From the IMG/VR virus record IMGVR_UViG_3300037294_000266, positions 62,001 through 126,000 of that record: a DNA stretch of 64,000 nucleotides. The stretch is one strand, 5' to 3'. This document shows positions 11,540-61,090 of this stretch, piece by piece. Within the stretch, counting starts at the first letter, position 1. Each line of letters starts with the position of its first letter. The notes beneath the pieces were generated by a model. The model did not search any database. It saw only the letters and a list, made by a program, of their open reading frames with translations, and was not told the origin of the DNA. Made by a program: the position numbers and the translations under genes.

Positions 11540-12625
11540 CATTATATTCAGTTAGGTTCGTTAATCCTAACCCGCCTCTCAGTAGCAGGCAGCTGCATGT
11601 CGCCATGCAGAGTAGACTATATCACACTCCACTTCCATGTGGAGTCCTCCCATTTCGAGTCCACTTGGACCCTACAATACTCGGTTCGCCATTATCATCA
11701 ATGTGGCGCCTTTCTTTAGTCGTTGGGCCTTACCGTAGTCCGTATCCACTGTATTTTGGGTTCTTGCTTTTGATCCTGTAATGGATCGTAGGAACTGGAA
11801 TTCCTAACTGCCGGCCTGCCTCGGCCAGCGAAGGATAGACAACGCCATCTATAACCACACTGAGTGTGTTTGGCGGTATATTTCCTTTACGGGCTTCTGA
11901 CAACTTTGCGCGAGTTTCGAGGGTGTGACTACGGCCAAAGAACGGGTTACTTTCACCAGTCCTTGCAGATGCTATTTCAGAAAGTCGTTTTCGAGTCTCT
12001 TCTGATCTAACACTACCTGTAGCGTAACTGTTTCCTCGTTGAATATCGGATAAACGAGCAATGACTTCAGCAGTATGACTGCGCCCAAACATTCCGTTTG
12101 ATTCGCCTTGCCTTCCGTACACCTGTACTCGTTCTTCTTCCGTCATTCTTTCCAGCCGTAATCTAAGAGAATCACCTATCCGAGAAATTATATCTTCTCG
12201 ATCAGGATGTCTCGTTAGATTATCGCCACCGATAGCCTGCGTACCGATATTGAGGCACTTCTTATTAAAAGTACCGCGACGGATTAAATGATCTTCGCAC
12301 TTGTAAGCTTCTTCCCTAGAATCGTACTCTTGGATAGATGCTCGCATTTCATGGCCAGCGTCAAATAGCTGCTGAAGTAACTGGTTATGATGAGTCCCAT
12401 TATAGAGCTCTCGCTCATGCCGGTCTAATCGCTTGTCCAGTTCACCAGTGCTACCGACGTAGTAACTTCCAGTATTCAAATCAGTGATTACGTATGTGTA
12501 GTACATTGTCGTCTCCTTTGGATAGGAAACGGACTACGGCTTTAGCAACGGATTGTCTCTTAGAGAGTTCCCCGTTTTAGAGAGGTTTTCAAGATAGCTT
12601 ACGCTATCAGGGCGCAGTTTGATTT
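11540..12625 (-). mobile_element. Group I self-splicing intron (1086 nt) in thyA
   Basis: 5' exon ends in U with P1 GCGUA/UGCGC including the U.G pair. P-like AAAACGGGGAAC, Q-like AAUCCGUUGCU, R-like CCCAACGACUAAA, S-like GAUAUAGUCU, terminal G. Splicing restores LYQR|SCDVFLG. Confidence 0.93.
11730..12506 (-). CDS. Intron-encoded GIY-YIG homing endonuclease (I-TevI-like)
   Basis: YTYVI...YYVGST...R...H catalytic domain, three NUMOD3-like HT/S-x-E-T-R-x-K-L-S repeats and a C-terminal HTH. Flanked by the P6a arms GCCGTAGTCCGT / ACGGACTACGGT. Confidence 0.93.
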   Translation of the reverse strand: MYYTYVITDLNTGSYYVGSTGELDKRLDRHERELYNGTHHNQLLQQLFDAGHEMRASIQEYDSREEAYKCEDHLIRRGTFNKKCLNIGTQAIGGDNLTRHPDREDIISRIGDSLRLRLERMTEEERVQVYGRQGESNGMFGRSHTAEVIARLSDIQRGNSYATGSVRSEETRKRLSEIASARTGESNPFFGRSHTLETRAKLSEARKGNIPPNTLSVVIDGVVYPSLAEAGRQLGIPVPTIHYRIKSKNPKYSGYGLR

Positions 12626-14319: not shown

Positions 14320-14663
14320 AGTTCTCCAGGTTCAAGATGATCGTCGCCGGTACTTTTCTCAGCACTGCGTCCGCTTGAATTGAGTCTGAAACGCTCGGCT
14401 GCTCCAGAGTCAATGAACTCCTTGTACTCGACCAGTTCTTTATAGCTGTTCTTCAAACCTTCCAGCCCACAGTAAATGATTTCACGGTGGCCTGAACCAA
14501 ATCCGGATTCGGAAGCACACCAGTCATCATCATTGTGTTTAACACCCCGGCCGATATCGGCAAACGAGACAGTCTTCCAGAGACCTCGTCCCGTTTCAAT
14601 AGCCAGGGCTGTAATGGCCGTTTTGAGTTCATCGACTGTTTCAGGGACTTTGCTCTCCATCAT
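14316..14663 (-). CDS. Hypothetical protein
   Basis: GGAGG SD, ATGA overlap. Confidence 0.65.
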   Translation of the reverse strand: MMESKVPETVDELKTAITALAIETGRGLWKTVSFADIGRGVKHNDDDWCASESGFGSGHREIIYCGLEGLKNSYKELVEYKEFIDSGAAERFRLNSSGRSAEKSTGDDHLEPGEL

Positions 14664-51059: not shown

Positions 51060-51977
51060 TTACGGCGTGTACTCAGATAGGCCATTGTTGACGCCAACTT
51101 CCGTGACTCCACCGAAAACATACATTTTGTTACCGTAAACCACAGCTGCCATTGAATGGTGGGTATTTGGACCGGCTGGTTTATCTACTATATCCCATGC
51201 ATTCGTAACGGGATCGTATACGTAGATAATAGTGGCAGTTACAGAGCCGCCTCCATAAACATATAACTTACCGTTTATCGAAAAGGCGGTGTGGTACTGT
51301 AGGGCGTTTGGCATGCCTGCTAAATCGGTCCATTTATTCGTGAGTGGATCATACATGGACAATCCGTACACGACGCTTCCCGTACTATTTCGACCACCGG
51401 TCACGTACATCTTATCACCGACTACCGCAGCGGCATGGTAACGACGTGGAGTACTTGAGGCGAGAGCCTTCCAAGTGTCGGTAGCGGGGGTGTATTCGTA
51501 CAGCGATCCTAATGCGTTGCCGGCATTACCAGCACCGCCGTAAACATATAACTTACCGTTGATAGCCACTGCGGAATGAGATTGTACTCCTACCGGGTAC
51601 GGGTTCTTAGTAGTCCAGGTATCCGATGATGGGTCGTAGACATCAAGACCGTTGGAAGTGCCGTATCCGTTATAACCGCCGAGAACATAAATCTTGTTAT
51701 TGATTGTACAGGCGGTGTGACGTATTCTTTTTAAAGCTGACTTTCTTCCACGCCACGTACCGTTAAGAAAATTGTATTCATAATGTAAATCTAGGACGGG
51801 TCCATTCACTGTACTCGACCCTCCGTAAACGTAGATACAATCTTCGGAAACGGCTGCTGAATACCAATGACTTTTAAATGACGTTGGAGCACTGCTTTTA
51901 GATATCCATGTACTAATCGCAACCGATAACTTACTTCGTTCAAAAGCGTGAGCTGCAGGTAATAGACTGGCTAACAT
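51060..51977 (-). CDS. Kelch-repeat beta-propeller protein
   Basis: Six repeats of the form H-x-A-x-x-x-N-G-K-I/L-Y-V-x-GG...Y-D-P-x-T-x-x-W. Confidence 0.92.
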   Translation of the reverse strand: MLASLLPAAHAFERSKLSVAISTWISKSSAPTSFKSHWYSAAVSEDCIYVYGGSSTVNGPVLDLHYEYNFLNGTWRGRKSALKRIRHTACTINNKIYVLGGYNGYGTSNGLDVYDPSSDTWTTKNPYPVGVQSHSAVAINGKLYVYGGAGNAGNALGSLYEYTPATDTWKALASSTPRRYHAAAVVGDKMYVTGGRNSTGSVVYGLSMYDPLTNKWTDLAGMPNALQYHTAFSINGKLYVYGGGSVTATIIYVYDPVTNAWDIVDKPAGPNTHHSMAAVVYGNKMYVFGGVTEVGVNNGLSEYTP

Positions 51978-53296: not shown

Positions 53297-53512
53297 TCAG
53301 GTTTCGGAACGAGGGGCGAAGGCCATGTCAAGTCCTTCCCAAGCACCGACTGCATTGGAGGTGTCAATATAACCAGAAGGACCTCGTGCACCACAGTTGG
53401 TACATTCAACCTGATGTCCAGGCATTAAGCCTTCTACCTCAGGAGTGAGTCCTTTACTAAGAACACGAATAATACTTTCTTTGCACCAAGGGCACGGGGT
53501 CTTTGACTTCAT
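53297..53512 (-). CDS. Lar-family (restriction alleviation-like) zinc-finger protein
   Basis: CPWC...VECTNCGARGP...AVGAW, GGAG SD. Confidence 0.65.
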   Translation of the reverse strand: MKSKTPCPWCKESIIRVLSKGLTPEVEGLMPGHQVECTNCGARGPSGYIDTSNAVGAWEGLDMAFAPRSET

Positions 53513-53543
53513 GGGTATACTCCAGTTGATAAATCATCCACAC

Positions 53544-53612
53544 AAGCGGAACCTAAGCTCACACCAAGCCCGAAGGCTATTACAGACAGTGCAATGCGTT
53601 CATATACCGCTT
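53544..53612 (-). ncRNA. Small multibranch structured element with cUUCGg tetraloop
   Basis: Closing stem AAGCGG/CCGCTT, internal ATTGCA/TGTAAT and AGCC-TTCG-GGCT. Confidence 0.4.
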
Positions 53613-53661
53613 CCTACCTTTGATCCCAGCACGTTAGGGAGGCAGCACTAAAATAGTCTTT

Positions 53662-53810
53662 TGGTTCGTGTCGCGATGATATTAGATTCCATAGGCCGGT
53701 CGTAATGAGAGAGACTCTCGTTACTCCTTACTAAGCAGACAGACAGTTTCTCAGGCTGTTCCGTCTACGTTTCTCATCTTGAGCCTCGCCGTTGAGTACG
53801 GCTCTCGGAA
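53662..53810 (-). ncRNA. Three-hairpin structured element ending in CCA
   Basis: GCCGT/ACGGC, AGAC..ACAG/CTGT..GTCT, GTAA-GAGAG/CTCTC-TTAC. The 3' end reads GAACCA. Confidence 0.4.
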
Positions 53811-53812
53811 AT

Positions 53813-53995
53813 TGGCGGGAAATTGAGGATTTGAACCCCCTTCTCCAGACGTCTTTTCTTACCGTTCGGATTCCTGATTAACCCACTGGTCAGGTGGGAT
53901 TTCGCTTGGCCTCAGAACCACCTGAGACGAGCTACTGCCCTATGCACCGATAAGAGTACCGCCTGTCGCATTAAACATGTCTATGCTAAGATCCC
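53813..53995 (-). ncRNA. 183-nt tRNA-like RNA with pseudoknot-containing domain replacing the anticodon arm
   Basis: Acceptor GGGA/TCCC with G-CCA end, D-stem GCAT/ATGC, T-loop TTCAAAT, extended stem CAGGCG/CGTCTG and TCTTATCG/CGGTAAGA, pseudoknot CCCAC/GTGGG with CCTGA/TCAGG. The first G is the G of a TATG motif. Confidence 0.7.
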
Positions 53996-54005
53996 ATAAC
54001 TGTTA

Positions 54006-54194
54006 TCAAAGACTGCTCAAGTAATTATCTCGTCTTTCGACGAACGCCTGATGGGTCTTTGATGTCTTAACCATTTCGTTGATAACAAAGGTAATGTCGT
54101 CAACTGCATCCTTACCCTGCTCTTTGAACACGCGATCGAGAATAGCATCGCGCTGAGCTAAGGTAAGTCGTTTGTGTGTTTCAATGGGTATCAT
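54006..54194 (-). CDS. Hypothetical protein
   Basis: 62 aa, GAGG SD. Confidence 0.6.
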   Translation of the reverse strand: MIPIETHKRLTLAQRDAILDRVFKEQGKDAVDDITFVINEMVKTSKTHQAFVERRDNYLSSL

Positions 54195-54206
54195 GCTAAC
54201 CTCTAG

Positions 54207-54653
54207 TTAAAGGCCGCACCAACCAACTTTAGTGCCGCCAGAATAAGGGACTGCGAGTCCTCGAGCAATAAGCTCATCTCCAACGACTCTGCCGTCTACG
54301 ACCACAGTGGCCAGTAAGCGAAAGTACTTATCACGATCGAGGTTGGTCAGTGTCACTCGTTTACCATTGGCAATCATTTCACCGACAGCGTCACGAGCTT
54401 TTATGGCCAGTATTTTCTCTGCATCACGTTCAGCCTTTGTGGCACAGTCACTCCGCATCTCTGGTGTATCGATGCCATTTACTCTGACTGACAACCGATC
54501 TCCAAAGACATCAGGCAGGTACGGAATCTGGACAGTGAGTGTGTCACCATCGTAGATACTGACAACGTCCTCAGGAATGAGTTTTATCTCTTCAAGAGGA
54601 TACGCTTGAACGGTGCCACATGCCAGCAGAAAACTAAGAAGTAAAATACGCAT
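54207..54653 (-). CDS. Secreted thermonuclease (SNase family)
   Basis: Signal peptide, YDGDT, VRVNGIDTPE, DKYFRLLA, LIARGLA. Confidence 0.9.
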   Translation of the reverse strand: MRILLLSFLLACGTVQAYPLEEIKLIPEDVVSIYDGDTLTVQIPYLPDVFGDRLSVRVNGIDTPEMRSDCATKAERDAEKILAIKARDAVGEMIANGKRVTLTNLDRDKYFRLLATVVVDGRVVGDELIARGLAVPYSGGTKVGWCGL

Positions 54654-54797
54654 GATGACTCCAGGTCAATGACAGTTAATTCATAGTCATTGACCTGTAA
54701 AGGGGTGAGTGATGAGTTTACCAAACTAGGTGGTCACCCGCGCAACGGAGACCTCATCAACTCGATCAACACTGTCCATGGCAGGACAGAGTTAAAA

Positions 54798-54885
54798 TGG
54801 CGGAAGCGGTGAGATTCGAACTCACGGACCCCGAAGAGTCGACAGTTTTCAAGACTGTAGGATTCAACCGCTCTCCCACGCTTCC
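54798..54885 (-). tRNA. trnS: tRNA-Ser(UGA)
   Basis: Complete type II cloverleaf GGAAGCG...ACAGTCT-TGA-AAACTGT...long variable arm...GTTCGAATC...CGCTTCC-G-CCA. Confidence 0.97.
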
Positions 54886-54890
54886 AATAC

Positions 54891-54963
54891 AGGTGCTGAT
54901 ACCGGGAATCGAACCCGAGTCCTCCGTCACCAACAGGTGCGCCTTCTCTGCGCCACTATCTAC
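54891..54963 (-). ncRNA. Degenerate tRNA-like element (intact T-arm, weak anticodon arm, ACCT end)
   Basis: D-stem GCGC/GCGC, T-arm TCGGG-TTCGATT-CCCGG, acceptor 6/7 bp. Confidence 0.6.
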
Positions 54964-54965
54964 CA

Positions 54966-55039
54966 AGTAGATAGACAGGACTTTAACCTGCGACCTCCTG
55001 TCTCGTTTACCGGGACACTACCAGCTGAGCTATAACGGC
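54966..55039 (-). ncRNA. Degenerate tRNA-like element with non-matching acceptor strands
   Basis: TAGCTCAGCTGGTAG D-region, T-arm GCAGG-TTAAAGT-CCTGT. Its 3' strand CTATCTAC pairs with the next element rather than its own 5' end. Confidence 0.55.
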
Positions 55040-55044
55040 GAAAT

Positions 55045-55133
55045 AGGCGGAGAGCCACCTTAGACTTCCTGATGTGCCCGACGGGAGAGCACGGAAGTAA
55101 CGGGTTAGATTAGCACCCTCCAAGGGGCTCTCC
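55045..55133 (-). ncRNA. Y-shaped RNA with long acceptor-like stem and G-CCT tail
   Basis: GGAGAGCC/GGCTCTCC plus CCTTGG/CTAAGG, hairpins GGGT/ACCC and ACTTCC-GTGC/GCAC-GGAAGT. Confidence 0.55.
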
Positions 55134-55137
55134 TGTT

Positions 55138-55258
55138 TGGTCCAAGTATCCGGGTTCGAACCGGTGGAGTATAACATCCGATCGACGTGCGACCATAGTC
55201 GCGTTCGTCATCAGACATCACTCCCAGAGCCACCTCCCAAACCCGATCATAATCTTGG
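55138..55258 (-). ncRNA. 121-nt tRNA-like RNA with long irregular stem replacing the anticodon arm
   Basis: Acceptor CCAAG/CTTGG with A-CCA end, T-arm CCGG-TTCGAAC-CCGG, about 24-bp interrupted stem capped by GCGAC-TATG-GTCGC. Confidence 0.7.
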
Positions 55259-55440
55259 GACTAAGGCCGAATTACACGGCGAGCACGGATCTCTGTACTT
55301 GTACACTAGGCGCGAGCGTTTACGACCATCGAGTTCTTTTGCTTCCGAACGCTAAAGGTAAGGGGCCTCGACGTCATCTACTCGCATTAATCGGTTCTCT
55401 CACTGCGGATCTCTACATATATCAGCAGTGTTAATATTTT

Positions 55441-56691
55441 TTAATTGGTTATTACAGTACACCCACGGCTTATTAAAGTGTTTTTAGACGCTATACCGTT
55501 TGCAGAAGGTGCAGCGCTGGTTCCAGTTATTGTAATGTTTTCATTAGTAAATAACGTGGTCCCATTAGTTCCGTCTAATGAAGCAAATTGTGCAAGAAGA
55601 GCATCGACAGAAACAGCTGATAGTGGACAGTTGATATAAACCGATCCATTGACTTCTTTTAAACTATTGCTTAATTTAAATATAGTGAGTCCAGTCAGCG
55701 TAGGCCCGAGACTTATAGCATTGCCGTCAGTTAGGTTACAGCCTATTTTCTCTAACGAACTAAAGGTTAAATTTGTTATAGCTGGTGCTGTTGAAATACT
55801 TAGCCTTCCTTTAATTTGAGTTAAATTAGGAAGACTGACGGTTGTACATGCAGCCAATTCGTTTATACTGAAATTACCTTCTACAGTGGTCAAGCCGGCA
55901 AAGTTAACCGTGGTGCACCCAGCTAAGGTGTTTAACGAAAAGTTACCGTATACCGTAATCAATGAAGGGACGGAGATTATTGCAAAGGCTACATTACTTG
56001 CTATGTTAAAATTACCAACCACCACAGTCAATAGCGGACAAGATAAACTTGTTAGACCAGCCAGGTTAGAGGTAGAGAAACCACCCATTACAACCTTTAA
56101 CTCTGGAAAATTAAGAAAGGATAATGCAACCAATCCACTAATCGACAAGGTCCCTGTAAGGCCTTGTAAATTACTGAACGTTAAAGTCGTTATATCCACG
56201 TTAGCACTTGGAACGACTAACGTGGAAGCCCAAATGCCTGAATAGTCCGGAGTCACAACACTATTTATAGCGGTCGGGGGAGGTGTCAGGATAGCTGTAA
56301 TTGGTTCAGCCACCACTCCTACTGTTGAATAATCTAAAATAAATAAAGTACCGATTGGTGTACCGCCTAAACTAAACCAATCATCCCCATTAAATCCTTC
56401 GAACCATGTGAAATCGGTATTAAACCTAAAATGTCCGCCCTCGGTTACAATGGGGCGGTTTAGTGTAGAACCTACTGAAAACCATTTAACTAAAAAGTCT
56501 AATTTAATTTTATCATCAGACGACATAAAACCGTTTTCTAAAAGGTTTACAATGGCGTGAGCGAGACTTCCAGATTCAAGATGACTTAATAGTGCTGGAG
56601 GTATCAGATCTTGCTTTTTATCAACCCTGGCTATGAGACGTGTCATCAATTTGTTAAATTCTTTTACCATTGTTTCGATGACAGTTGTCAT
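55441..56691 (-). CDS. AT-rich L-domain/LRR-like beta-solenoid protein (possible tail appendage or receptor-binding protein)
   Basis: About 23-aa repeats (F/L-P-x-L-x-x-V-x-G-x-F-x-I), C-cap AAPSANGIASKNTLISRGCTVITN. Start revised to 56691. Confidence 0.75.
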   Translation of the reverse strand: MTTVIETMVKEFNKLMTRLIARVDKKQDLIPPALLSHLESGSLAHAIVNLLENGFMSSDDKIKLDFLVKWFSVGSTLNRPIVTEGGHFRFNTDFTWFEGFNGDDWFSLGGTPIGTLFILDYSTVGVVAEPITAILTPPPTAINSVVTPDYSGIWASTLVVPSANVDITTLTFSNLQGLTGTLSISGLVALSFLNFPELKVVMGGFSTSNLAGLTSLSCPLLTVVVGNFNIASNVAFAIISVPSLITVYGNFSLNTLAGCTTVNFAGLTTVEGNFSINELAACTTVSLPNLTQIKGRLSISTAPAITNLTFSSLEKIGCNLTDGNAISLGPTLTGLTIFKLSNSLKEVNGSVYINCPLSAVSVDALLAQFASLDGTNGTTLFTNENITITGTSAAPSANGIASKNTLISRGCTVITN

Positions 56692-56721
56692 ATATAAATT
56701 TCCTGTGCTCATTTTGTGGAT

Positions 56722-56763
56722 GTAACATCCGATCAGAGTAATGGTACTCTGATCGGATGTTAC
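56722..56763. terminator. 19-bp perfect stem-loop
   Basis: GTAACATCCGATCAGAGTA-ATGG-TACTCTGATCGGATGTTAC. Confidence 0.7.
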
Positions 56764-56820
56764 GTCGAGCGCGGATCTTTATACGAGTCATGTCATCTAC
56801 TCACATTGACTTTATAGCCT

Positions 56821-57090
56821 TTAACAGCCTAATGAGCAGATCTCTTCGTTACCTACAACTATCTTGACCAAAGGTCGCTCTCCAGACGCATCGAGCTTTA
56901 CGTCGATGTCGTATTCATGGAAACCAGCCTTCTGGTCTTCGAGGGCTTCGTTCATTGCATGACGAGTGCGTTCATCAATAAGGACATCGCCAGTCTCCGA
57001 TAATGCATGGAGGGTGGCTCTTACTCTTAGAACTACCGCATCTACAATGGACTTGTCTGCGGGACGGTAGATATCAAGCTTCTTACTCAT
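56821..57090 (-). CDS. Hypothetical protein
   Basis: 89 aa, GAGG SD. Confidence 0.65.
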   Translation of the reverse strand: MSKKLDIYRPADKSIVDAVVLRVRATLHALSETGDVLIDERTRHAMNEALEDQKAGFHEYDIDVKLDASGERPLVKIVVGNEEICSLGC

Positions 57091-57250
57091 ACCACTTCCT
57101 CAGACATAAATAACTACACGTTAGCTTCCATTGACCCACAGGCTTTTTCCGTCATCCAGGATCTCTCCTACACTGACGCCTATCCACAGGATTCACCTTA
57201 CGAGGGTTACTTTGGTTTGTGCTGTCATCGCTCGCGTGTATCGCAGTGCA

Positions 57251-57397
57251 CTACGATTCTTTACCGAATATCCTATCCATTGCCAGACGAAGTCTTTCTT
57301 CATCTTCTGGGGTAGGAGTAGGAAGGGGCTTTCCAGGGCAGGCGTGAATGCCACAGATATTACATATCGGACAACACTGCCTTTCGTCTTCTAACAT
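57251..57397 (-). CDS. Small Cys-rich protein (48 aa)
   Basis: MLEDERQCCPICNICGIHAC. The SD GGGGG is supplied by the 3' acceptor strand of the upstream tRNA-like element. Confidence 0.5.
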   Translation of the reverse strand: MLEDERQCCPICNICGIHACPGKPLPTPTPEDEERLRLAMDRIFGKES

Positions 57398-57491
57398 GAT
57401 ACCCCCTACAGGATTCGAACCCATGCTCGCGCAGTATCCGAATGCGAATTTGGACACTACCCAGCTCTAACCAACTGAGACTTAAAGAGGC
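57397..57491 (-). ncRNA. tRNA-like RNA with 7-bp anticodon stem and 12-nt loop
   Basis: Acceptor GCCTCTT/AGGGGGT, CTCAGTTGGTTAGAG D-arm, AGTGTCC/GGATACT, T-loop TTCGAAT, A-TCA end. Confidence 0.65.
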
Positions 57492-57504
57492 TTAACAGAA
57501 ATCG

Positions 57505-57825
57505 TGGGTTGATGACCTGAAGCGGTCTTAGATGTTTTCACATCACCCGTCAACCTACTGGGCTTGCCGTTACCATTTCGCCCGAATGGTCAAGGGGATC
57601 TGTCATACGCTTCTAGATCTTGGGCAGGGCGGTGACTAAACAGTTCTATTGTTCAGACACATCCTTCTCGGGGTGCGGCTTTGGACTTCCCTGATCGCAC
57701 GTCTCCAATAGACTAGAGGATGCGGTCGTAGGGTTTCAGATAAGAGATCAGACTGTGCAGTCCGGTGCCTAGGTGAGTAGGGCACTGTCTTGATCAATCA
57801 TTCCCCAGCTGGTTGAGGGGGAATT
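57505..57825 (-). ncRNA. Run of structured non-coding elements
   Basis: GGTTGA/TCAACC junction with GATGT-GAAA-ACATC and GACC/GGTC, plus ACCATT/AATGGT, GTGCC/GGCAC, GACTG/CAGTC and ATTCCCC/GGGGAAT. No ORF of 60 aa or more in the track. Confidence 0.5.
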
Positions 57826-57828
57826 AAA

Positions 57829-57910
57829 CACCTCTAGCGAGTCTCGAAGTCGCACACCGTCGATTAGAATGGCTACCAATCGACTGTCCTACCAATTGGA
57901 CGATAGAGGT
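57829..57910 (-). ncRNA. tRNA-like RNA with 7-bp anticodon stem and 12-nt loop
   Basis: Perfect acceptor ACCTCTA/TAGAGGT, D-arm GTCC-AATTGGTA-GGAC, GTCGATT/AATCGAC, T-loop TTCGAGA. No encoded CCA. Confidence 0.75.
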
Positions 57911-57924
57911 ATAAACGCTGTATG

Positions 57925-58050
57925 TAAGTATGATGGGATTCAAACCCACGTACGCTTTGGTATAGCCAATGGACTGGCACCTCGGCGTTCTAGTCCAACC
58001 GTCCGCGTTACCGGACATTTCACCCTTAAGCCAGGCTCAGGAACATACTC
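57925..58050 (-). ncRNA. 126-nt tRNA-like RNA with three hairpins between the D- and T-arms
   Basis: Acceptor GAGTATG/CATACTT, D-stem CCT/AGG, hairpins GTCC/GGAC, GGACT/AGTCC and TTGG/CCAA, T-arm GTGGG-TTTGAAT-CCCAT. Confidence 0.7.
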
Positions 58051-58060
58051 ACACACAAAC

Positions 58061-58148
58061 AGGTGGCAGCCGACCGAGTTCCCCCGATCCGATCCAGTAT
58101 GGGTTCGAAAACGCACTAAGGCAATCGACGTACTGAACTTAAGCTACC
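58061..58148 (-). ncRNA. Degenerate tRNA-like element (acceptor, long arm, T-like arm, ACCT end)
   Basis: GGTAGCT/GGCTGCC, TTCAGTA/TACTGGA, GATCG/CGGTC. Confidence 0.5.
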
Positions 58149-58157
58149 ATTGTAACG

Positions 58158-58270
58158 TCGAGAACGCGGGCCGGCGCCGCGTATGGCTGCCTCATTGGGC
58201 TGCCGATCATAGTGCGCGCTGCCACTAGGGCTGCCGCTGATCCGGTGCGGAGACGAACCCGCGTTCTCGA
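58158..58270. ncRNA. Multibranch hairpin with 13-bp closing stem and four GGCAGC motifs
   Basis: TCGAGAACGCGGG/CCCGCGTTCTCGA. GCTGCC on the + strand at 58186, 58199, 58218 and 58230. Confidence 0.65.
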
Positions 58271-58321
58271 ACTCTTACACGATTGTTAATCGTGATTAAA
58301 ATGGCGATTTGGCGTAATTAT

Positions 58322-58858
58322 TTAAGCTGTCGTATAGCGTTTACCGGAGTGTATGTTCTCTACAACACCCCTACTAATTCCAAACATTCTGGCTATTTCA
58401 CGCTGAGAATGTTTACCCTTTAATGAGAGAACTCTATTCGCCTCTTCTTGAGTAAGAACAGCATTATGACTATCGGCTCCGCGACGTTGTTTCAATAAAC
58501 CATTTTCTTTTGCATGGTCCATATTACCTTGCCGAGTAGTCCACTCTAATTGAGTGTAACCATTTTTGGCTTTATCGCAGAAAACATGATTGACTTCAAG
58601 ATCATCACTTTCTCTTCCAACAAAGGCTTTGGCAACCTGTACATGGATTTTTATACAGATGTTCTTACCCTTCCTACCACCTATTTTACTAGCATGGGTC
58701 AGGTAGCCATTATGATTCAATGTCTGAGACAGTATTTTACCTGTCCTGCGACTTCTCAAGGTGCCTTTCGAACCAATATCAAAGTGTTCTGGATAATCCG
58801 GACACGGAACAAATATTTCATCTTCGTCGTCAAGTGTCCAGCCAACTAATTTACTCAT
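58322..58858 (-). CDS. Free-standing NUMOD4-HNH homing endonuclease with C-terminal HTH
   Basis: IGSKGTLRS, IHVQVAKAF, EVNHVFCDKAKN...LEWTTRQGNMDHA, SQREIARMFGISRG. Start at 58858 with GGAGG. Confidence 0.85.
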   Translation of the reverse strand: MSKLVGWTLDDEDEIFVPCPDYPEHFDIGSKGTLRSRRTGKILSQTLNHNGYLTHASKIGGRKGKNICIKIHVQVAKAFVGRESDDLEVNHVFCDKAKNGYTQLEWTTRQGNMDHAKENGLLKQRRGADSHNAVLTQEEANRVLSLKGKHSQREIARMFGISRGVVENIHSGKRYTTA

Positions 58859-58865
58859 GTTGACC

Positions 58866-58889
58866 TCCATCTGTTTATTGTCAGATGGA
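58866..58889 (-). promoter_or_regulatory. Hairpin occluding the HNH ribosome-binding site
   Basis: TCCATCTG-ACAATAAA-CAGATGGA overlaps GGAGG, with TACATTA immediately upstream. Confidence 0.6.
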
Positions 58890-58912
58890 TAATGTATGAT
58901 CTAAAGAAAAGG

Positions 58913-58949
58913 AACAGCCAGCTACTCTACCTGTCTGAGCTATCATGGA
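58913..58949 (-). pseudogene. 5' half of tRNA-Asn(GUU), truncated right after the anticodon
   Basis: TCCATGA-TA-GCTC-AGACAGGTA-GAGT-A-GCTGG-CT-GTT, then unrelated HNH leader sequence. No matching 3' half (CCAGC...TCATGGA) found. Confidence 0.75.
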
Positions 58950-58957
58950 ATTAAATT

Positions 58958-59203
58958 GTGTAGCGCTGAGGACTTTCACCTCTCCTTTTCATGTCAGAGT
59001 TTAGTCGGACACGGAACACAACGCCACCTATGTTCAGAGTAATCGCCTGTCAGGACGGAATCCACCTTCATGGTGCGCGATGCGCACCATTGCTGACAGA
59101 CTATTGCTACAACGGAACGGAGACCAGTCCTATTCAGAACCGATAAGACAGCCGTGAAGAAGTCTCGTCCGTTCTGCCTTTGCAGCAAATTCTTCTAGGC
59201 ATA
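58958..59203 (-). ncRNA. Long-hairpin structured element(s) plus decayed tRNA-like tail
   Basis: TTGCTGCA/TGTAGCAA-closed hairpin, GTCTGTCAG/CTGACAGGC enclosing ATGGTGCGC/GCGCACCAT, T-like GAGG-TGAAAGT-CCTC. TATG at 59200-59203. Confidence 0.5.
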
Positions 59204-59223
59204 CAATACAGAGAATCAGTTAT

Positions 59224-59382
59224 TTAACACACCATCTCTGGAACTGGGATATCTTGTTCTTTACAGAATCGCTCAAGGTTAGCCTGAGCCAGTTGAAACT
59301 TCAAGACAGCTTTTAGAGTCTTCTGTCGGTTATCTTCAGAAGGACATCCTCTTAGTACAGCAACCTTAATCGTCTTGATCAT
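59224..59382 (-). CDS. Small hypothetical protein (52 aa)
   Basis: MIKTIKVAVLRG..., below the track cutoff. Confidence 0.4.
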   Translation of the reverse strand: MIKTIKVAVLRGCPSEDNRQKTLKAVLKFQLAQANLERFCKEQDIPVPEMVC

Positions 59383-59537
59383 GACCGATACCTCACGATG
59401 GGTACATTCTCCTCATCTGCACCTAGGACACGTGCCATTCTGGACGGGCTAGGATACAGATGAGGGGCTATCATCGCATCCAACATGGGACGCAAGTGTT
59501 TCACATATTGTACGCTAACAATGTTATTTTTTACAAG

Positions 59538-59969
59538 TCATTGTTCTTGGTTCAACACGTCGACAACCGAACCGAGCATATGAGCTGTCTTCAGATCAAT
59601 GATACCGCGCTGGAAGGATGAGTTGGCATGGTCGTGCCGATAACCCTCAATGGAGCTCAACACGGTACATAGCGTGTAAGAACGAATACGTCCTTCTCCA
59701 CACTGAATGTAGATCGCTTCCGCACCTGCCTTACGCTGTTCTTCACAGAACGCAACGAGCTGTTCACCTTTATCCTTAGTGAACAGTCGCTCTGCAGCTA
59801 CGTCGTTATGGAAGTGATCGCCTGGAAAGAAGCTAAGGCGAAGGACAGGACGGTTGGCTTCGTTAGGTATTTCGATATGGCTGGAGTAGACATCACCAAT
59901 ACTTACGATAGGGACATCCTTAGGAATGTCCTTTATGCGGTCTTTGCCGACATTGAGTAAACGGGTCAT
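59538..59969 (-). CDS. Protein-tyrosine/dual-specificity phosphatase-like protein
   Basis: IVSIGD...LRLSF...IYIQCGEGRIRS (CX5R P-loop). Confidence 0.7.
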   Translation of the reverse strand: MTRLLNVGKDRIKDIPKDVPIVSIGDVYSSHIEIPNEANRPVLRLSFFPGDHFHNDVAAERLFTKDKGEQLVAFCEEQRKAGAEAIYIQCGEGRIRSYTLCTVLSSIEGYRHDHANSSFQRGIIDLKTAHMLGSVVDVLNQEQ

Positions 59970-61090
59970 TCGTTTTCTTCCTTTACAGGGATGGGGATGT
60001 ACCATTCCGCATCGGGGAATAGTCCGTTCATGTACACTTCAACAGCATCTTTGACAGTGTTGAGGATGGATATTGGGAGTTGTCGTTCGCTTACATTCAC
60101 TCCATGAAGTTCGATGGTCTCAAACGTCAAGGGTGTTTTGTCACGCGCCCAGGAGTTCTTCATCTTCAATTCATTCATACGCTCCCAACTATTCCAGTCG
60201 GTATCGTTCGTAGAAATGGAGACGTGACCACCATCGAATTTAATCTGTCTGCCGTAGCCAGAACGAGAACGGTCGTTGAAATGATACATGCCTTTATTAA
60301 GGGCCGCAATCACTCGATCAGAATGGACTTTGCCAGCAGCGATCTCGAGCAGTGCGGATGGAGAGAACGAGCGACGTGATTGGTTATGCGCCGAGCTTAG
60401 TATGGTATCGACAGTTTCATCAACCATCAATTCTTCAGCCAGTACATCGAGGACGCTTTGGGCGAGGTACTTGTTAGTAAGGGACACGAACGCGTCTTCG
60501 ACATGATGGCAGAGATGTGCTGAATGGTATTGGAAATTGTTGTTATAAAGCGCATGACTGCGTTCGATCGATCCGGTAAGATCCCACCAACACTCTGGAG
60601 TATAGATGCGGTAACTGACCTTATCGATATATGACATACCTTCACTGGAAGAGGATTTAGGAGTCAATTCAATGTCGATGATCAACGACCCAGAATGAAT
60701 GACCTTTATCATCTTGCCATCAGTATCAAAGTCACCCGTCGGCCATAGCTTCATTAACATCTGACTCCATCGGCACATGGCGTAGATCAGATGTTCTTCA
60801 TCGATGACAGGGAGGACTTTAACAGCTAGGTTGTCAAGATTACCTTCGACGGTTTGGCCGAGGTATTTACACGCATTACGCAAAGCCGTTGACTGGATGC
60901 CACGACCGCTCAAAATAGTACCTTCATGACTAGTGGTAATCATGCCGATGTTCGCCATGGCGTTGTCAGCGATCTGGCGGAATTCATTTCTCACCATCTC
61001 CGGCAACGCGGCGTTGTTAGACAACTGACTGAGACCAGATGCAATCATATCCAAAGTCTGTCTGATGTGAAGCATGTTCATAGTGTCCAT
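59966..61090 (-). CDS. Hypothetical protein
   Basis: 374 aa after start revision. Confidence 0.7.
   Translation of the reverse strand: MDTMNMLHIRQTLDMIASGLSQLSNNAALPEMVRNEFRQIADNAMANIGMITTSHEGTILSGRGIQSTALRNACKYLGQTVEGNLDNLAVKVLPVIDEEHLIYAMCRWSQMLMKLWPTGDFDTDGKMIKVIHSGSLIIDIELTPKSSSSEGMSYIDKVSYRIYTPECWWDLTGSIERSHALYNNNFQYHSAHLCHHVEDAFVSLTNKYLAQSVLDVLAEELMVDETVDTILSSAHNQSRRSFSPSALLEIAAGKVHSDRVIAALNKGMYHFNDRSRSGYGRQIKFDGGHVSISTNDTDWNSWERMNELKMKNSWARDKTPLTFETIELHGVNVSERQLPISILNTVKDAVEVYMNGLFPDAEWYIPIPVKEENE

What the first reader, a model, noticed from the sequence alone, without database searches (positions are those of the whole stretch)
57829..57910. Near-perfect cloverleaf with 7-bp anticodon stem and 12-nt loop
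The acceptor (7/7) and D-stem (4/4) are perfect, yet the loop is GGUAGCCAUUCU. It has the same stem and loop lengths as the element at 57397, and both loops contain CAUUC. Two independent scaffolds converging on one geometry suggests function, such as nuclease decoy, frameshift or stall effector, or protein-binding loop.
Basis: partly seen in the sequence, partly recalled or inferred. Interest (0 to 1): 0.7.

Follow-up and report, generated by a model that had tools for sequence, protein, structure and literature searches.

The report
Phage tRNA look-alike, overlong anticodon arm
A tRNA-shaped gene in a jumbo phage has a longer hairpin where its anticodon loop should be, so it almost certainly cannot read codons; it sits among several tRNA look-alikes in a fast-changing RNA island, and nothing shows that it does anything.

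Summary
On the minus strand, 57829-57910 is a tRNA-derived cloverleaf (Rfam tRNA 41.5 bits, cut-off 29). The acceptor stem is 7/7 and the D stem 4/4. The anticodon arm is 26 nt instead of 17: 7 Watson-Crick pairs plus a 12-nt loop, or 9 pairs plus an 8-nt loop in the minimum-energy fold.

It is not a working decoder:
- the arm is 4 pairs too long;
- the T stem has a C53:C61 mismatch;
- no CCA is encoded, although all 11 canonical tRNAs of this phage clade encode one;
- default ARAGORN rejects it.

The window is part of a 266.6-kb phiKZ-like jumbo phage, and the element lies in a 1.2-kb non-coding RNA island. The one homologue found, a contig from an unrelated metagenome, keeps the long arm; its three substitutions all lie in the arm and the two in the stem stay paired. 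The element is cleanly absent from two relatives and swapped out in the closest one, so it is a dispensable cassette.

My best reading is a non-decoding tRNA mimic kept for its tRNA body (0.45). A decaying pseudogene (0.38) is nearly as likely. The frameshift or stall idea has no support. I rate it a new variant of a known kind, of moderate interest.

The parts
57829..57910 (-). E2, the finding: an 82-nt tRNA-derived cloverleaf. Acceptor 5' strand 57904-57910; D arm 57886-57901; anticodon-position arm 57859-57884; variable loop 57854-57858; T arm 57837-57853; acceptor 3' strand 57830-57836; discriminator G at 57829.
   Evidence: Rfam tRNA 41.5 bits. The minimum-energy fold is a cloverleaf. Found by my own acceptor/T/D scan.
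57859..57884 (-). The overlong arm GUCGAUU-GGUAGCCAUUCU-AAUCGAC: 7 Watson-Crick pairs plus a 12-nt loop, or 9 pairs plus the 8-nt loop UAGCCAUU. It is 9 nt longer than a tRNA anticodon arm.
   Evidence: Arm alone: -10.6 kcal/mol, z = -4.8. All three substitutions in the X19 homologue fall here (57866, 57873, 57880), and the 9 pairs are kept.
57823..57828 (-). 3' flank UUUAAU. Its UUUA repeats the UUUA just 5' of the element (57912-57915); these repeats mark the edges of the 90-nt insertion/deletion.
   Evidence: Junction GCGUU|AUUCCCCC in L008 against GCGUUUAU[E2]UUUAAUUCCCCC here. An X22 contig skips 57823-57912.
57400..57491 (-). E1, the companion tRNA-like element: acceptor 7/7 (four G.U), irregular D arm, long arm at the anticodon position, canonical T arm, no CCA (A UCA).
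   Evidence: Kept in L004 with U4.G to C4-G (57488). It occupies the slot where L008 has tRNA-His(GUG).
57925..58050 (-). E3, the neighbouring 126-nt tRNA-shaped RNA: acceptor 7/7, class-II-like D arm, T arm, and hairpins where the anticodon arm should be. It forms one swappable cassette block with E2.
   Evidence: It is 92-98% conserved in L008 and in contigs of four unrelated runs. Acceptor pair 6:120 changes U-A to C-G in L008.
57492..57822 (-). Conserved ~330-nt structured RNA between E2 and E1. E2 abuts its 5' end and E1 abuts its 3' end.
   Evidence: z = -2.6, and 0 of 100 shuffles fold as well. Read by eye from the alignment with L008: several double compensatory changes, for example CUCU/GGAG to GCUC/GAGC around the identical loop AGUCUAUU.

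Best explanation
E2 is a tRNA-derived gene cassette that makes a non-decoding tRNA mimic.

Shown:
- It has a full tRNA body: acceptor stem, D and T loops and the bases behind the usual tertiary contacts.
- The anticodon loop is replaced by a stable hairpin, about 9 pairs with an 8-nt loop.
- It lies on the same strand as all its neighbours, inside a non-coding island of tRNAs, tRNA look-alikes and other conserved structured RNAs in a phiKZ-like jumbo phage.
- It was gained or lost as a 90-nt unit.

Inferred:
- It is transcribed with the island and folds into an L shape.
- Host RNase P and the host 3'-end processing enzymes cut it out, because they read only the acceptor/T-arm half and the elbow.
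- It then persists as a stable RNA of about 82 nt that stays out of translation: the arm is about 4 pairs too long to reach the decoding centre, it has no usable anticodon loop, no CCA is encoded and G53-C61 is broken.
- Whatever it does, it does through its tRNA-like body. Either it occupies a host factor that recognises tRNA shape, such as a tRNA-directed defence nuclease or a processing or modification enzyme, or it simply supplies a processing site that frees the 5' end of the adjacent ~330-nt RNA. The tip of the arm is left free to change.

Nothing here establishes which of these two roles applies.
For: - Derived from a tRNA and structurally intact. Rfam gives 41.5 bits over the full model. 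The minimum-energy fold is a cloverleaf. Of 25 stem pairs only one (53:61) is broken.
- The extension is fully paired, which happens in about 2% of random loops.
- The one homologue (run X19) differs at three positions, all in the arm: 3 of 26 nt there against 2 of 125 nt elsewhere on that contig (Fisher p = 0.036). The two stem changes keep pairing, and the variant folds better (-30.5 kcal/mol).
- Not built for aminoacylation in this clade's way. All 11 canonical tRNAs in this phage and its relatives DT01, L002 and L004 encode CCA after the discriminator. None of the 5 non-canonical tRNA-like elements does. A wider scan of nine tRNA islands shows the same trend, with a few exceptions.
- Neighbouring non-canonical tRNA-shaped RNAs are demonstrably under selection. 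E3 has a compensatory acceptor change and is 92-98% conserved across unrelated samples, while a flanking protein is only 54% identical. The nested twin element keeps its helices with entirely different sequences in L002.
- A tRNA-like gene with 41 extra nt forming a hairpin at the same place occurs in Burkholderia phage FLC9.
- E2 and E1 directly flank a ~330-nt RNA that shows covariation.
Against: - There are no expression, processing or binding data.
- Only one homologue exists and it is about 96% identical, so conservation of the body (0 changes in 56 nt) is not significant on its own.
- E2 is dispensable. It is absent from L008 and from an X22 contig, where E3 already abuts the 330-nt RNA, and the E2+E3 block is replaced by unrelated sequence in the closest relative, L004.
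- This genome is visibly losing tRNA genes. tRNA-Asn is truncated by an HNH endonuclease gene, and tRNA-Thr(UGU) is lost by a deletion.
- The C53:C61 mismatch could equally be decay.
- No partner protein was identified. The phage has no RtcB, Ro/TROVE, Rnl2-type RNA ligase or CCA-adding enzyme.
Confidence: 0.45

Rival explanations
1. E2 is a dead tRNA gene, a relic in a decaying and recombining tRNA island. An insertion in the anticodon loop, a T-stem mutation and loss of CCA inactivated it, and it has not yet been deleted. It has no function.
For: - It has a C53:C61 mismatch and no CCA, and default ARAGORN rejects it.
- The same genome carries two clear tRNA wrecks: the tRNA-Asn 3' half is replaced by an HNH gene, and tRNA-Thr(UGU) is lost by a ~206-nt deletion.
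- E2 is absent or replaced in three relatives.
- No homologue of its 5' half turned up in IMG/VR, JGI metagenomes or GTDB genomes, and the cultured-phage collection had no match to the whole 1.2-kb island.
- U32/U33 with A37/A38 give two of the 'extra' pairs for free in any UU-NNN-AA loop.
Against: - Decay should hit stems at random, yet 24 of 25 pairs are intact and the extension is fully paired (p about 0.02).
- Turning an encoded CCA into UUU takes three changes, while no stem change has accumulated.
- The X19 homologue has changes only in the arm, and they keep the helix.
- Lytic phage genomes rarely keep junk, and neighbouring odd tRNA-like genes are under clear selection.
Confidence: 0.38
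2. E2 is a tRNA gene with a 9-nt intervening sequence. Removing GCCAUUCUA after position 37 would give tRNA-Thr(GGU); removing GGUAGCCAU after U33 would give tRNA-Arg(UCU).
For: - Either deletion restores a canonical 7-nt loop, UU-GGU-AA or UU-UCU-AA, on a 5-bp stem.
- Relaxed ARAGORN calls it tRNA-Arg(tct) with a 9-nt intron.
- The GGU reading survives in the X19 variant.
- The FLC9 element can be read the same way: AU-UUA-A, then the insert, then A.
Against: - Known bacterial and phage tRNA introns are group I ribozymes of hundreds of nt. Rfam finds none here.
- The arm is a plain helix with no bulge-helix-bulge motif.
- The phage encodes no RtcB or Rnl2-type ligase.
- The UCU reading becomes UCC in X19, which would change the amino-acid identity.
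- E1 has C at position 33, so it cannot be read this way.
- The lack of CCA and the C53:C61 mismatch would remain.
Confidence: 0.05
3. E2 acts on the ribosome as a frameshift or stalling effector. Alternatively, it acts by base pairing through its loop, for example with the mRNA of the adjacent HNH endonuclease.
For: - The loop GGUAGCCAUUCU is complementary at 11 of 12 positions to 58702-58713 inside the HNH ORF, on the same strand. About 0.004 such sites are expected within 1 kb.
- tRNAs with 8-nt loops are known frameshift suppressors (general knowledge).
Against: - The stem is 4 pairs longer than a tRNA's, so the anticodon end and the acceptor end cannot span the ribosomal sites together.
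- There is no encoded CCA and G53-C61 is broken.
- The HNH match was found after the fact, lies mid-ORF and not at the ribosome-binding site, and is weakened by the X19 substitution at 57873.
Confidence: 0.04

Closest known systems
Canonical phage-encoded tRNAs and the 'pseudo-tRNAs' found in phage tRNA islands (T4, T5, phiKZ-like phages)
   Same: It lies in a phage tRNA island, has a cloverleaf body with the invariant D- and T-loop bases, and passes Rfam's tRNA cut-off. Relatives carry ordinary tRNAs (Asn, Asp, His, Tyr, Gln, Ser, Thr) at the same locus.
   Different: The arm at the anticodon position is 26 nt with no 7-nt loop. It has a C53:C61 mismatch and no encoded CCA, whereas every canonical tRNA of the clade encodes one.
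T4 RNAC and RNAD, the small stable RNAs of the T4 tRNA region
   Same: They are small non-tRNA RNAs encoded among phage tRNA genes, and their role is unknown (PMC3014915).
   Different: No sequence relationship was tested or is claimed. Their anatomy was not compared here.
mascRNA and menRNA (the tRNA-like 3' modules of MALAT1 and MEN-beta), and the mitochondrial tRNA punctuation model
   Same: In these cases a tRNA-shaped module has its acceptor/T half read by RNase P and RNase Z so that a neighbouring long RNA is released, and the anticodon arm is degenerate. E2 and E1 directly flank a conserved ~330-nt RNA.
   Different: Those are eukaryotic or organellar systems. Processing of E2 has not been shown. 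Relatives manage without E2 at this junction.
YrlA, the bacterial Y RNA-like RNA with a tRNA-like domain (Rfam RF02553)
   Same: It is a non-decoding RNA that mimics the tRNA elbow. A neighbouring element in this window's island, and its homologues in L002, L004, L008 and RTH11, give weak YrlA matches of 21-44 bits against a cut-off of 69.
   Different: E2 has normal, unpermuted tRNA topology and gives no YrlA match. The phage has no Ro/TROVE protein.
Frameshift-suppressor tRNAs with expanded anticodon loops
   Same: The anticodon loop is larger than 7 nt.
   Different: Those keep a 5-bp stem, U33, CCA and charging. E2 lengthens the stem to about 9 pairs and lacks those features.
Phage tRNAs that escape or neutralise tRNA-cleaving defences (eLife 2023, PMC10264068; PARIS and T5 tRNA-Lys, PMC11464382; retron evasion, PMC11555353)
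   Same: These are phage-encoded tRNA genes whose anticodon-loop sequence is the part that changes. In E2, too, all differences between the two known copies are in that arm.
   Different: Those are functional decoders with point changes. E2 cannot decode. A decoy role has no precedent in these papers: a search of PMC10264068 for 'decoy' gave no hit.

Membership tests
tRNA (Rfam RF00005), as a sequence and structure family | Score at or above the curated gathering cut-off over the full model | tested here: met
   41.5 bits against a cut-off of 29, model positions 1-71.
Functional elongator tRNA | 5-bp anticodon stem with a 7-nt loop (U33, three anticodon bases, purine 37) | tested here: not met
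   The arm is 26 nt: 7 to 9 pairs with a 12- to 8-nt loop. Default ARAGORN makes no call.
Functional elongator tRNA | Intact T arm with the G53-C61 pair | tested here: not met
   C53:C61, flagged as non-standard in the Rfam alignment. The homologue in run X19 shows no difference from the window at these positions.
Functional elongator tRNA | 3' CCA, which is encoded in the gene in this phage clade | tested here: not met
   UUU follows the discriminator. All 11 canonical tRNAs in this phage, DT01, L002 and L004 encode CCA. Addition of CCA by a host enzyme cannot be excluded.
Functional elongator tRNA | Aminoacylation and use on the ribosome | not testable with these tools
   This needs tRNA sequencing, acid gels or charging assays.
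Intron-containing tRNA (group I) | A group I ribozyme inserted in the anticodon loop | tested here: not met
   The insert is 9 nt. There is no group I match anywhere in the window, or in 53500-60500 at E <= 10.
Intron-containing tRNA (archaeal/eukaryal type) | A bulge-helix-bulge motif at the splice sites, and a splicing endonuclease and ligase | tested here: not met
   The arm is an uninterrupted helix. The phage has no RtcB or Rnl2-type ligase. A splicing endonuclease family was not searched.
YrlA / Y RNA-like | A permuted tRNA-like domain plus a Ro-binding stem, with a Ro (TROVE) partner | tested here: not met
   No YrlA match at E2. No TROVE domain in the phage.
tRNA pseudogene | Loss of constraint: substitutions spread over the gene and stem pairs broken | tested here: inconclusive
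   24 of 25 pairs are intact, and the X19 changes lie only in the arm and stay paired. But there is only one homologue, at about 96% identity.
Processing (punctuation) tRNA-like module | Cleavage by RNase P and RNase Z that releases a neighbouring RNA | not testable with these tools
   The position fits: E2 lies 6 nt upstream of the conserved ~330-nt RNA and E1 lies at its 3' end. No RNA data exist.

The most novel reading that the evidence does not exclude
E2, E1, E3, the nested twin tRNA-like element and the FLC9 gene with a 41-nt insert may belong to an undescribed repertoire of jumbo-phage tRNA mimics. In this reading the tRNA body is kept and the anticodon is replaced by a variable hairpin. 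The genes are shuffled as cassettes between phages. They act as decoys or competitive inhibitors of host tRNA-directed immunity nucleases, or of other enzymes that read tRNA shape, and the fast-changing arm tip is the interface in an arms race.
Probability: 0.15. Interest if true: 0.75.

Novelty: new variant of a known kind. Interest (0 to 1): 0.4.

Why it matters
Phage tRNA genes are now understood partly as countermeasures to host nucleases that cut tRNAs. A phage gene that keeps the tRNA body but discards the anticodon would be something different: an RNA that exploits tRNA shape instead of decoding.

If E2 and its neighbours prove to be stable and functional, they would add RNA decoys or processing modules to the known toolkit of jumbo phages. 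They would also mark this 1.2-kb island as a source of new structured RNAs; E3, the ~330-nt RNA and the nested twin element are better supported than E2 itself.

If E2 is only a relic, the practical lesson concerns annotation. A full-model Rfam tRNA match and an ARAGORN 'tRNA-Thr(GGU)' call in this region are not decoders.

Tried and rejected
Searches for E2 or E3 that found nothing:
- blastn of the 1.2-kb island against cultured phages.
- Exact-word scans of IMG/VR viral contigs, JGI metagenomes and GTDB genomes with parts of the E2 arm, the E2 5' half, or E3.
- A DNA search of the full genomes of DT01 and of the IMG/VR relative that holds L002 matched only the 57139-57217 block.

Protein routes to relatives:
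- The flanking 423-aa and 89-aa proteins are unique to this lineage.
- A single-protein scan with the baseplate hub protein found nothing.
- Relatives came instead from a hub-protein alignment (L002), an exact-protein look-up (L004-L007) and the 371-aa neighbouring protein (L008).

Ideas rejected:
- A group I intron reading of ARAGORN's 'tRNA-Leu with a 242-nt intron' spanning E1: no Rfam support, and E1 has its own acceptor 5' strand.
- A split tRNA-Asn: no 3' half anywhere in the genome with 3 or fewer mismatches.
- A phage-encoded RNA repair, splicing or Ro system: no RtcB, TROVE, Rnl2-type ligase or CCA-adding enzyme.
- The 423-aa neighbour as an RNA enzyme: it looks like a leucine-rich-repeat protein.

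Uninformative:
- Sigma-70 promoter and intrinsic terminator scans were at background level.
- Literature searches found no description of phage tRNA-like genes with lengthened anticodon arms.
- The wastewater runs labelled RNA-Seq that hold E3 were judged 'probably DNA' by the tool, so they are not expression evidence.

Full report
**Source and setting.** The window is bases 62001-126000 of a 266,646-bp virus record rated complete. Its proteins match phiKZ-type families: internal head proteins, a 970-aa protein of unknown function and a DNA polymerase. The nearest cultured relative is Pseudomonas phage pPa_SNUABM_DT01, at 67-72% amino-acid identity. The finding lies in a 1.2-kb stretch without genes, 57091-58321. 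An HNH/NUMOD4 endonuclease ORF (58322-58870) lies on one side and an 89-aa ORF (56821-57090) on the other. All are on the minus strand.

**The observation.** Rfam's tRNA model matches 57829-57910 on the minus strand at 41.5 bits (cut-off 29) over the whole model. I call this element E2.
- The RNA has a 7/7 acceptor stem, a 4/4 D stem, the invariant D- and T-loop bases and a 5-nt variable loop.
- The anticodon arm is 26 nt instead of 17: GUCGAUU, then GGUAGCCAUUCU, then AAUCGAC.
- RNAfold returns a cloverleaf (-28.8 kcal/mol, z = -2.6). It extends the arm by a G.U and a G-C pair, giving 9 pairs and an 8-nt loop. The arm alone has z = -4.8.
- A random 16-nt loop on this stem reaches 7 pairs or more in 14% of trials and 9 pairs or more in 2%.

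**The companion element E1 (57400-57491).** It also exists and has a 7-pair stem with a 12-nt loop. It is less tRNA-like than E2. Rfam does not report it at E <= 10. Its D arm is irregular. Its minimum-energy arm is 9 pairs, an internal loop and 3 more pairs. The shared CAUUC is at chance level, about 0.06.

**What relatives show.** Contigs from a sediment metagenome (L004, L006, L007) are 98-100% identical to the window on both sides.
- In them E1 is kept. The one change inside it, at 57488, turns an acceptor U.G pair into C-G.
- The 240 nt at 57821-58060, which hold E2 and its neighbour E3 (57925-58050), are replaced by 243 unrelated nt.
- A more distant relative, L008, is a 267-kb phage from compost whose flanking protein is 54% identical. 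It has the same island at 76-92% nucleotide identity.
- In L008, E3 runs straight into the downstream conserved RNA: GCGUU|AUUCCCCC there, against GCGUUUAU-E2-UUUAAUUCCCCC here.
- A contig of run X22 shows the same clean 90-nt absence. Its short side is only 27 nt, so this carries a caveat.
- The only E2 homologue is a 151-nt contig of run X19. It differs at 57866, 57873 and 57880, all inside the arm: A-U to G.U, G.U to G-C, and one loop base. It keeps 9 pairs and folds slightly better.
- Changes on that contig are enriched in the arm: 3 of 26 nt against 2 of 125 nt (Fisher p = 0.036).

So the long arm is not private. Equally, E2 is a dispensable cassette that is present, absent or swapped among close relatives.

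**Why it is not a decoder.** The stem is about 4 pairs too long. No 7-nt loop exists and G53-C61 is broken. All 11 canonical tRNAs in this phage, DT01, L002 and L004 carry an encoded CCA, while none of the 5 odd tRNA-like elements does. The trend holds, with a few exceptions, across nine islands.

**The intron reading.** Deleting 9 nt would restore UU-GGU-AA or UU-UCU-AA. However:
- there is no group I signal;
- there is no bulge-helix-bulge motif;
- the phage has no RtcB or Rnl2-type RNA ligase;
- the UCU reading changes to UCC in X19;
- E1 has C at position 33.

**The island as a whole.** This context raises the odds that odd tRNA shapes here are made on purpose.
- E3 is a 126-nt tRNA-shaped RNA that is 92-98% conserved in L008 and in four unrelated metagenome runs, in different flanking contexts. 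It has a compensatory U-A to C-G change in its acceptor stem. Its variation is concentrated in the central hairpins.
- The ~330 nt between E2 and E1 fold well (z = -2.6). The alignment with L008 shows several double compensatory changes.
- A repeat-bearing hairpin element (58165-58275) is shared with DT01 and L008.
- A nested 'twin' tRNA-like RNA (54894-55040) includes ARAGORN's supposed tRNA-Thr(GGU). Its helices are kept with different sequences in L002, and it recurs in L004, L008 and Xanthomonas phage RTH11.
- Burkholderia phage FLC9 has a 42-bit tRNA match with 41 extra nt that form a hairpin in the anticodon loop, and no CCA.

**Signs of decay in the same genome.**
- tRNA-Asn(GUU) ends right after its anticodon. 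Its positions 37-72 are replaced by the HNH gene, and no 3' half exists elsewhere in the genome.
- tRNA-Thr(UGU) has been lost by a ~206-nt deletion that also damaged the twin element.

**Verdict.**
- E2 is certainly tRNA-derived, and almost certainly does not decode.
- I favour a tRNA mimic kept for its body (0.45). It would be cut out by RNase P and the 3'-end processing enzymes. It would then act either as a competitor for a factor that reads tRNA shape or as a processing site beside the 330-nt RNA.
- A pseudogene (0.38) is nearly as likely, because E2 is dispensable and has only one near-identical homologue.
- A spliced tRNA (0.05) and a ribosomal or antisense role (0.04) are poorly supported.
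- No paper found describes such elements. The nearest analogues are T4 RNAC and RNAD (PMC3014915), mascRNA-type processing modules, YrlA, and phage tRNAs with altered anticodon loops (PMC10264068).
- I rate it a new variant of a known kind, with moderate interest (0.4). The better-supported novelties are its neighbours.

Noticed in passing
58913-58949 and 58322-58870 (minus strand): A tRNA-Asn(GUU) gene stops right after its anticodon. Its positions 37-72 are replaced by about 612 nt carrying an HNH/NUMOD4 homing-endonuclease ORF. The intact gene is present in the near-identical relative at L004:6629-6705. No 3' half exists elsewhere in the genome.
   Followed up: yes
57925-58050 (minus strand): E3 is a 126-nt tRNA-shaped RNA with a 7/7 acceptor stem, a class-II-like D arm and a T arm, but no anticodon arm and no CCA. 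It is 92-98% conserved in L008 and in contigs of four unrelated runs, in different flanking contexts. Acceptor pair 6:120 changes U-A to C-G in L008. It is a better candidate for a new functional RNA than E2.
   Followed up: partly
57492-57822 (minus strand); L008:12722-13052: This is a ~330-nt structured RNA lying between tRNA or tRNA-like genes. z = -2.6. It has several double compensatory changes against L008, read by eye from the alignment. A biofilm-metagenome contig is 94% identical over 57571-57770. It gives no Rfam match.
   Followed up: partly
58165-58275 (minus strand); L001:18598-18730; L008:~12265-12385: An element of about 110 nt carries repeated GGCAGCC-like motifs inside a long closing stem. 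The stem sequence differs completely in DT01 yet still pairs, by eye. The automatic alignment did not capture this.
   Followed up: partly
54894-55040 (minus strand); L004:10175-10319; L002:16114-16263; L008:~14383-14533; L020:9350-9496: This is a nested 'twin' tRNA-like RNA. The outer part has an acceptor stem, D arm and T arm. It encloses a circularly permuted inner module (T arm, closed acceptor-like hairpin, D arm) that gives weak YrlA matches. In L002 the helices are kept with different sequences. ARAGORN's tRNA-Thr(GGU) at 54892-54963 is its 3' half, not a tRNA; Rfam gives it 18 bits.
   Followed up: partly
55018-55045 (minus strand), compared with L004:9969-10200: A ~206-nt deletion joins the 5' end of tRNA-Thr(UGU) to the D loop of the twin element. 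It removes that tRNA and weakens the twin's outer acceptor stem to 5/7.
   Followed up: yes
57139-57217 (minus strand); L002:15777-15840; L008:13825-13985: A non-coding block of about 80 nt (AAGUAACCCUCGUAAGGUGAA...GGAAAAAGCCUG) is conserved across distant relatives. In L008 it lies on the other side of the small ORF.
   Followed up: no
58702-58713 (minus strand, inside the HNH ORF): AUAAUGGCUACC is complementary at 11 of 12 positions to the E2 loop. About 0.004 such sites are expected within 1 kb. This was seen after the fact and is weakened in the X19 variant.
   Followed up: partly
L016:141-253 (minus strand) = Burkholderia phage FLC9, 129090-129202: A tRNA match of 42 bits has 41 extra nt in the anticodon loop that form a hairpin, and no CCA. 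It can be read as AU-UUA-A, then the insert, then A, which would be an ochre-reading anticodon if the insert were removed.
   Followed up: partly
L001, L002, L004 and L008 tRNA islands: The canonical tRNAs at this locus in relatives are mostly the four GUN-anticodon (queuosine-family) species Asn, Asp, His and Tyr, plus Gln, Ser and Thr. This window keeps only tRNA-Ser(UGA), at 54798-54885.
   Followed up: no
58058-58090 (minus strand); L001:18583-18615: A 33-nt block, GGAUCGGGGGAACUCGGUCGGCUGCCACCUGUU, is conserved with DT01 and L008. It sits just upstream of the swappable cassette slot, and its order relative to the GGCAGCC element is reversed in DT01. It could be a promoter or a processing signal.
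   Followed up: no
55441-56712 and 51060-51977 (minus strand): The genes between and beside the RNA islands are accessory repeat proteins. The 423-aa ORF looks like a BspA/DUF285-type leucine-rich-repeat protein; that is a lead from weak scores only. The 305-aa ORF is a Kelch-repeat protein. A staphylococcal-nuclease homologue lies at 54207-54653.
   Followed up: partly
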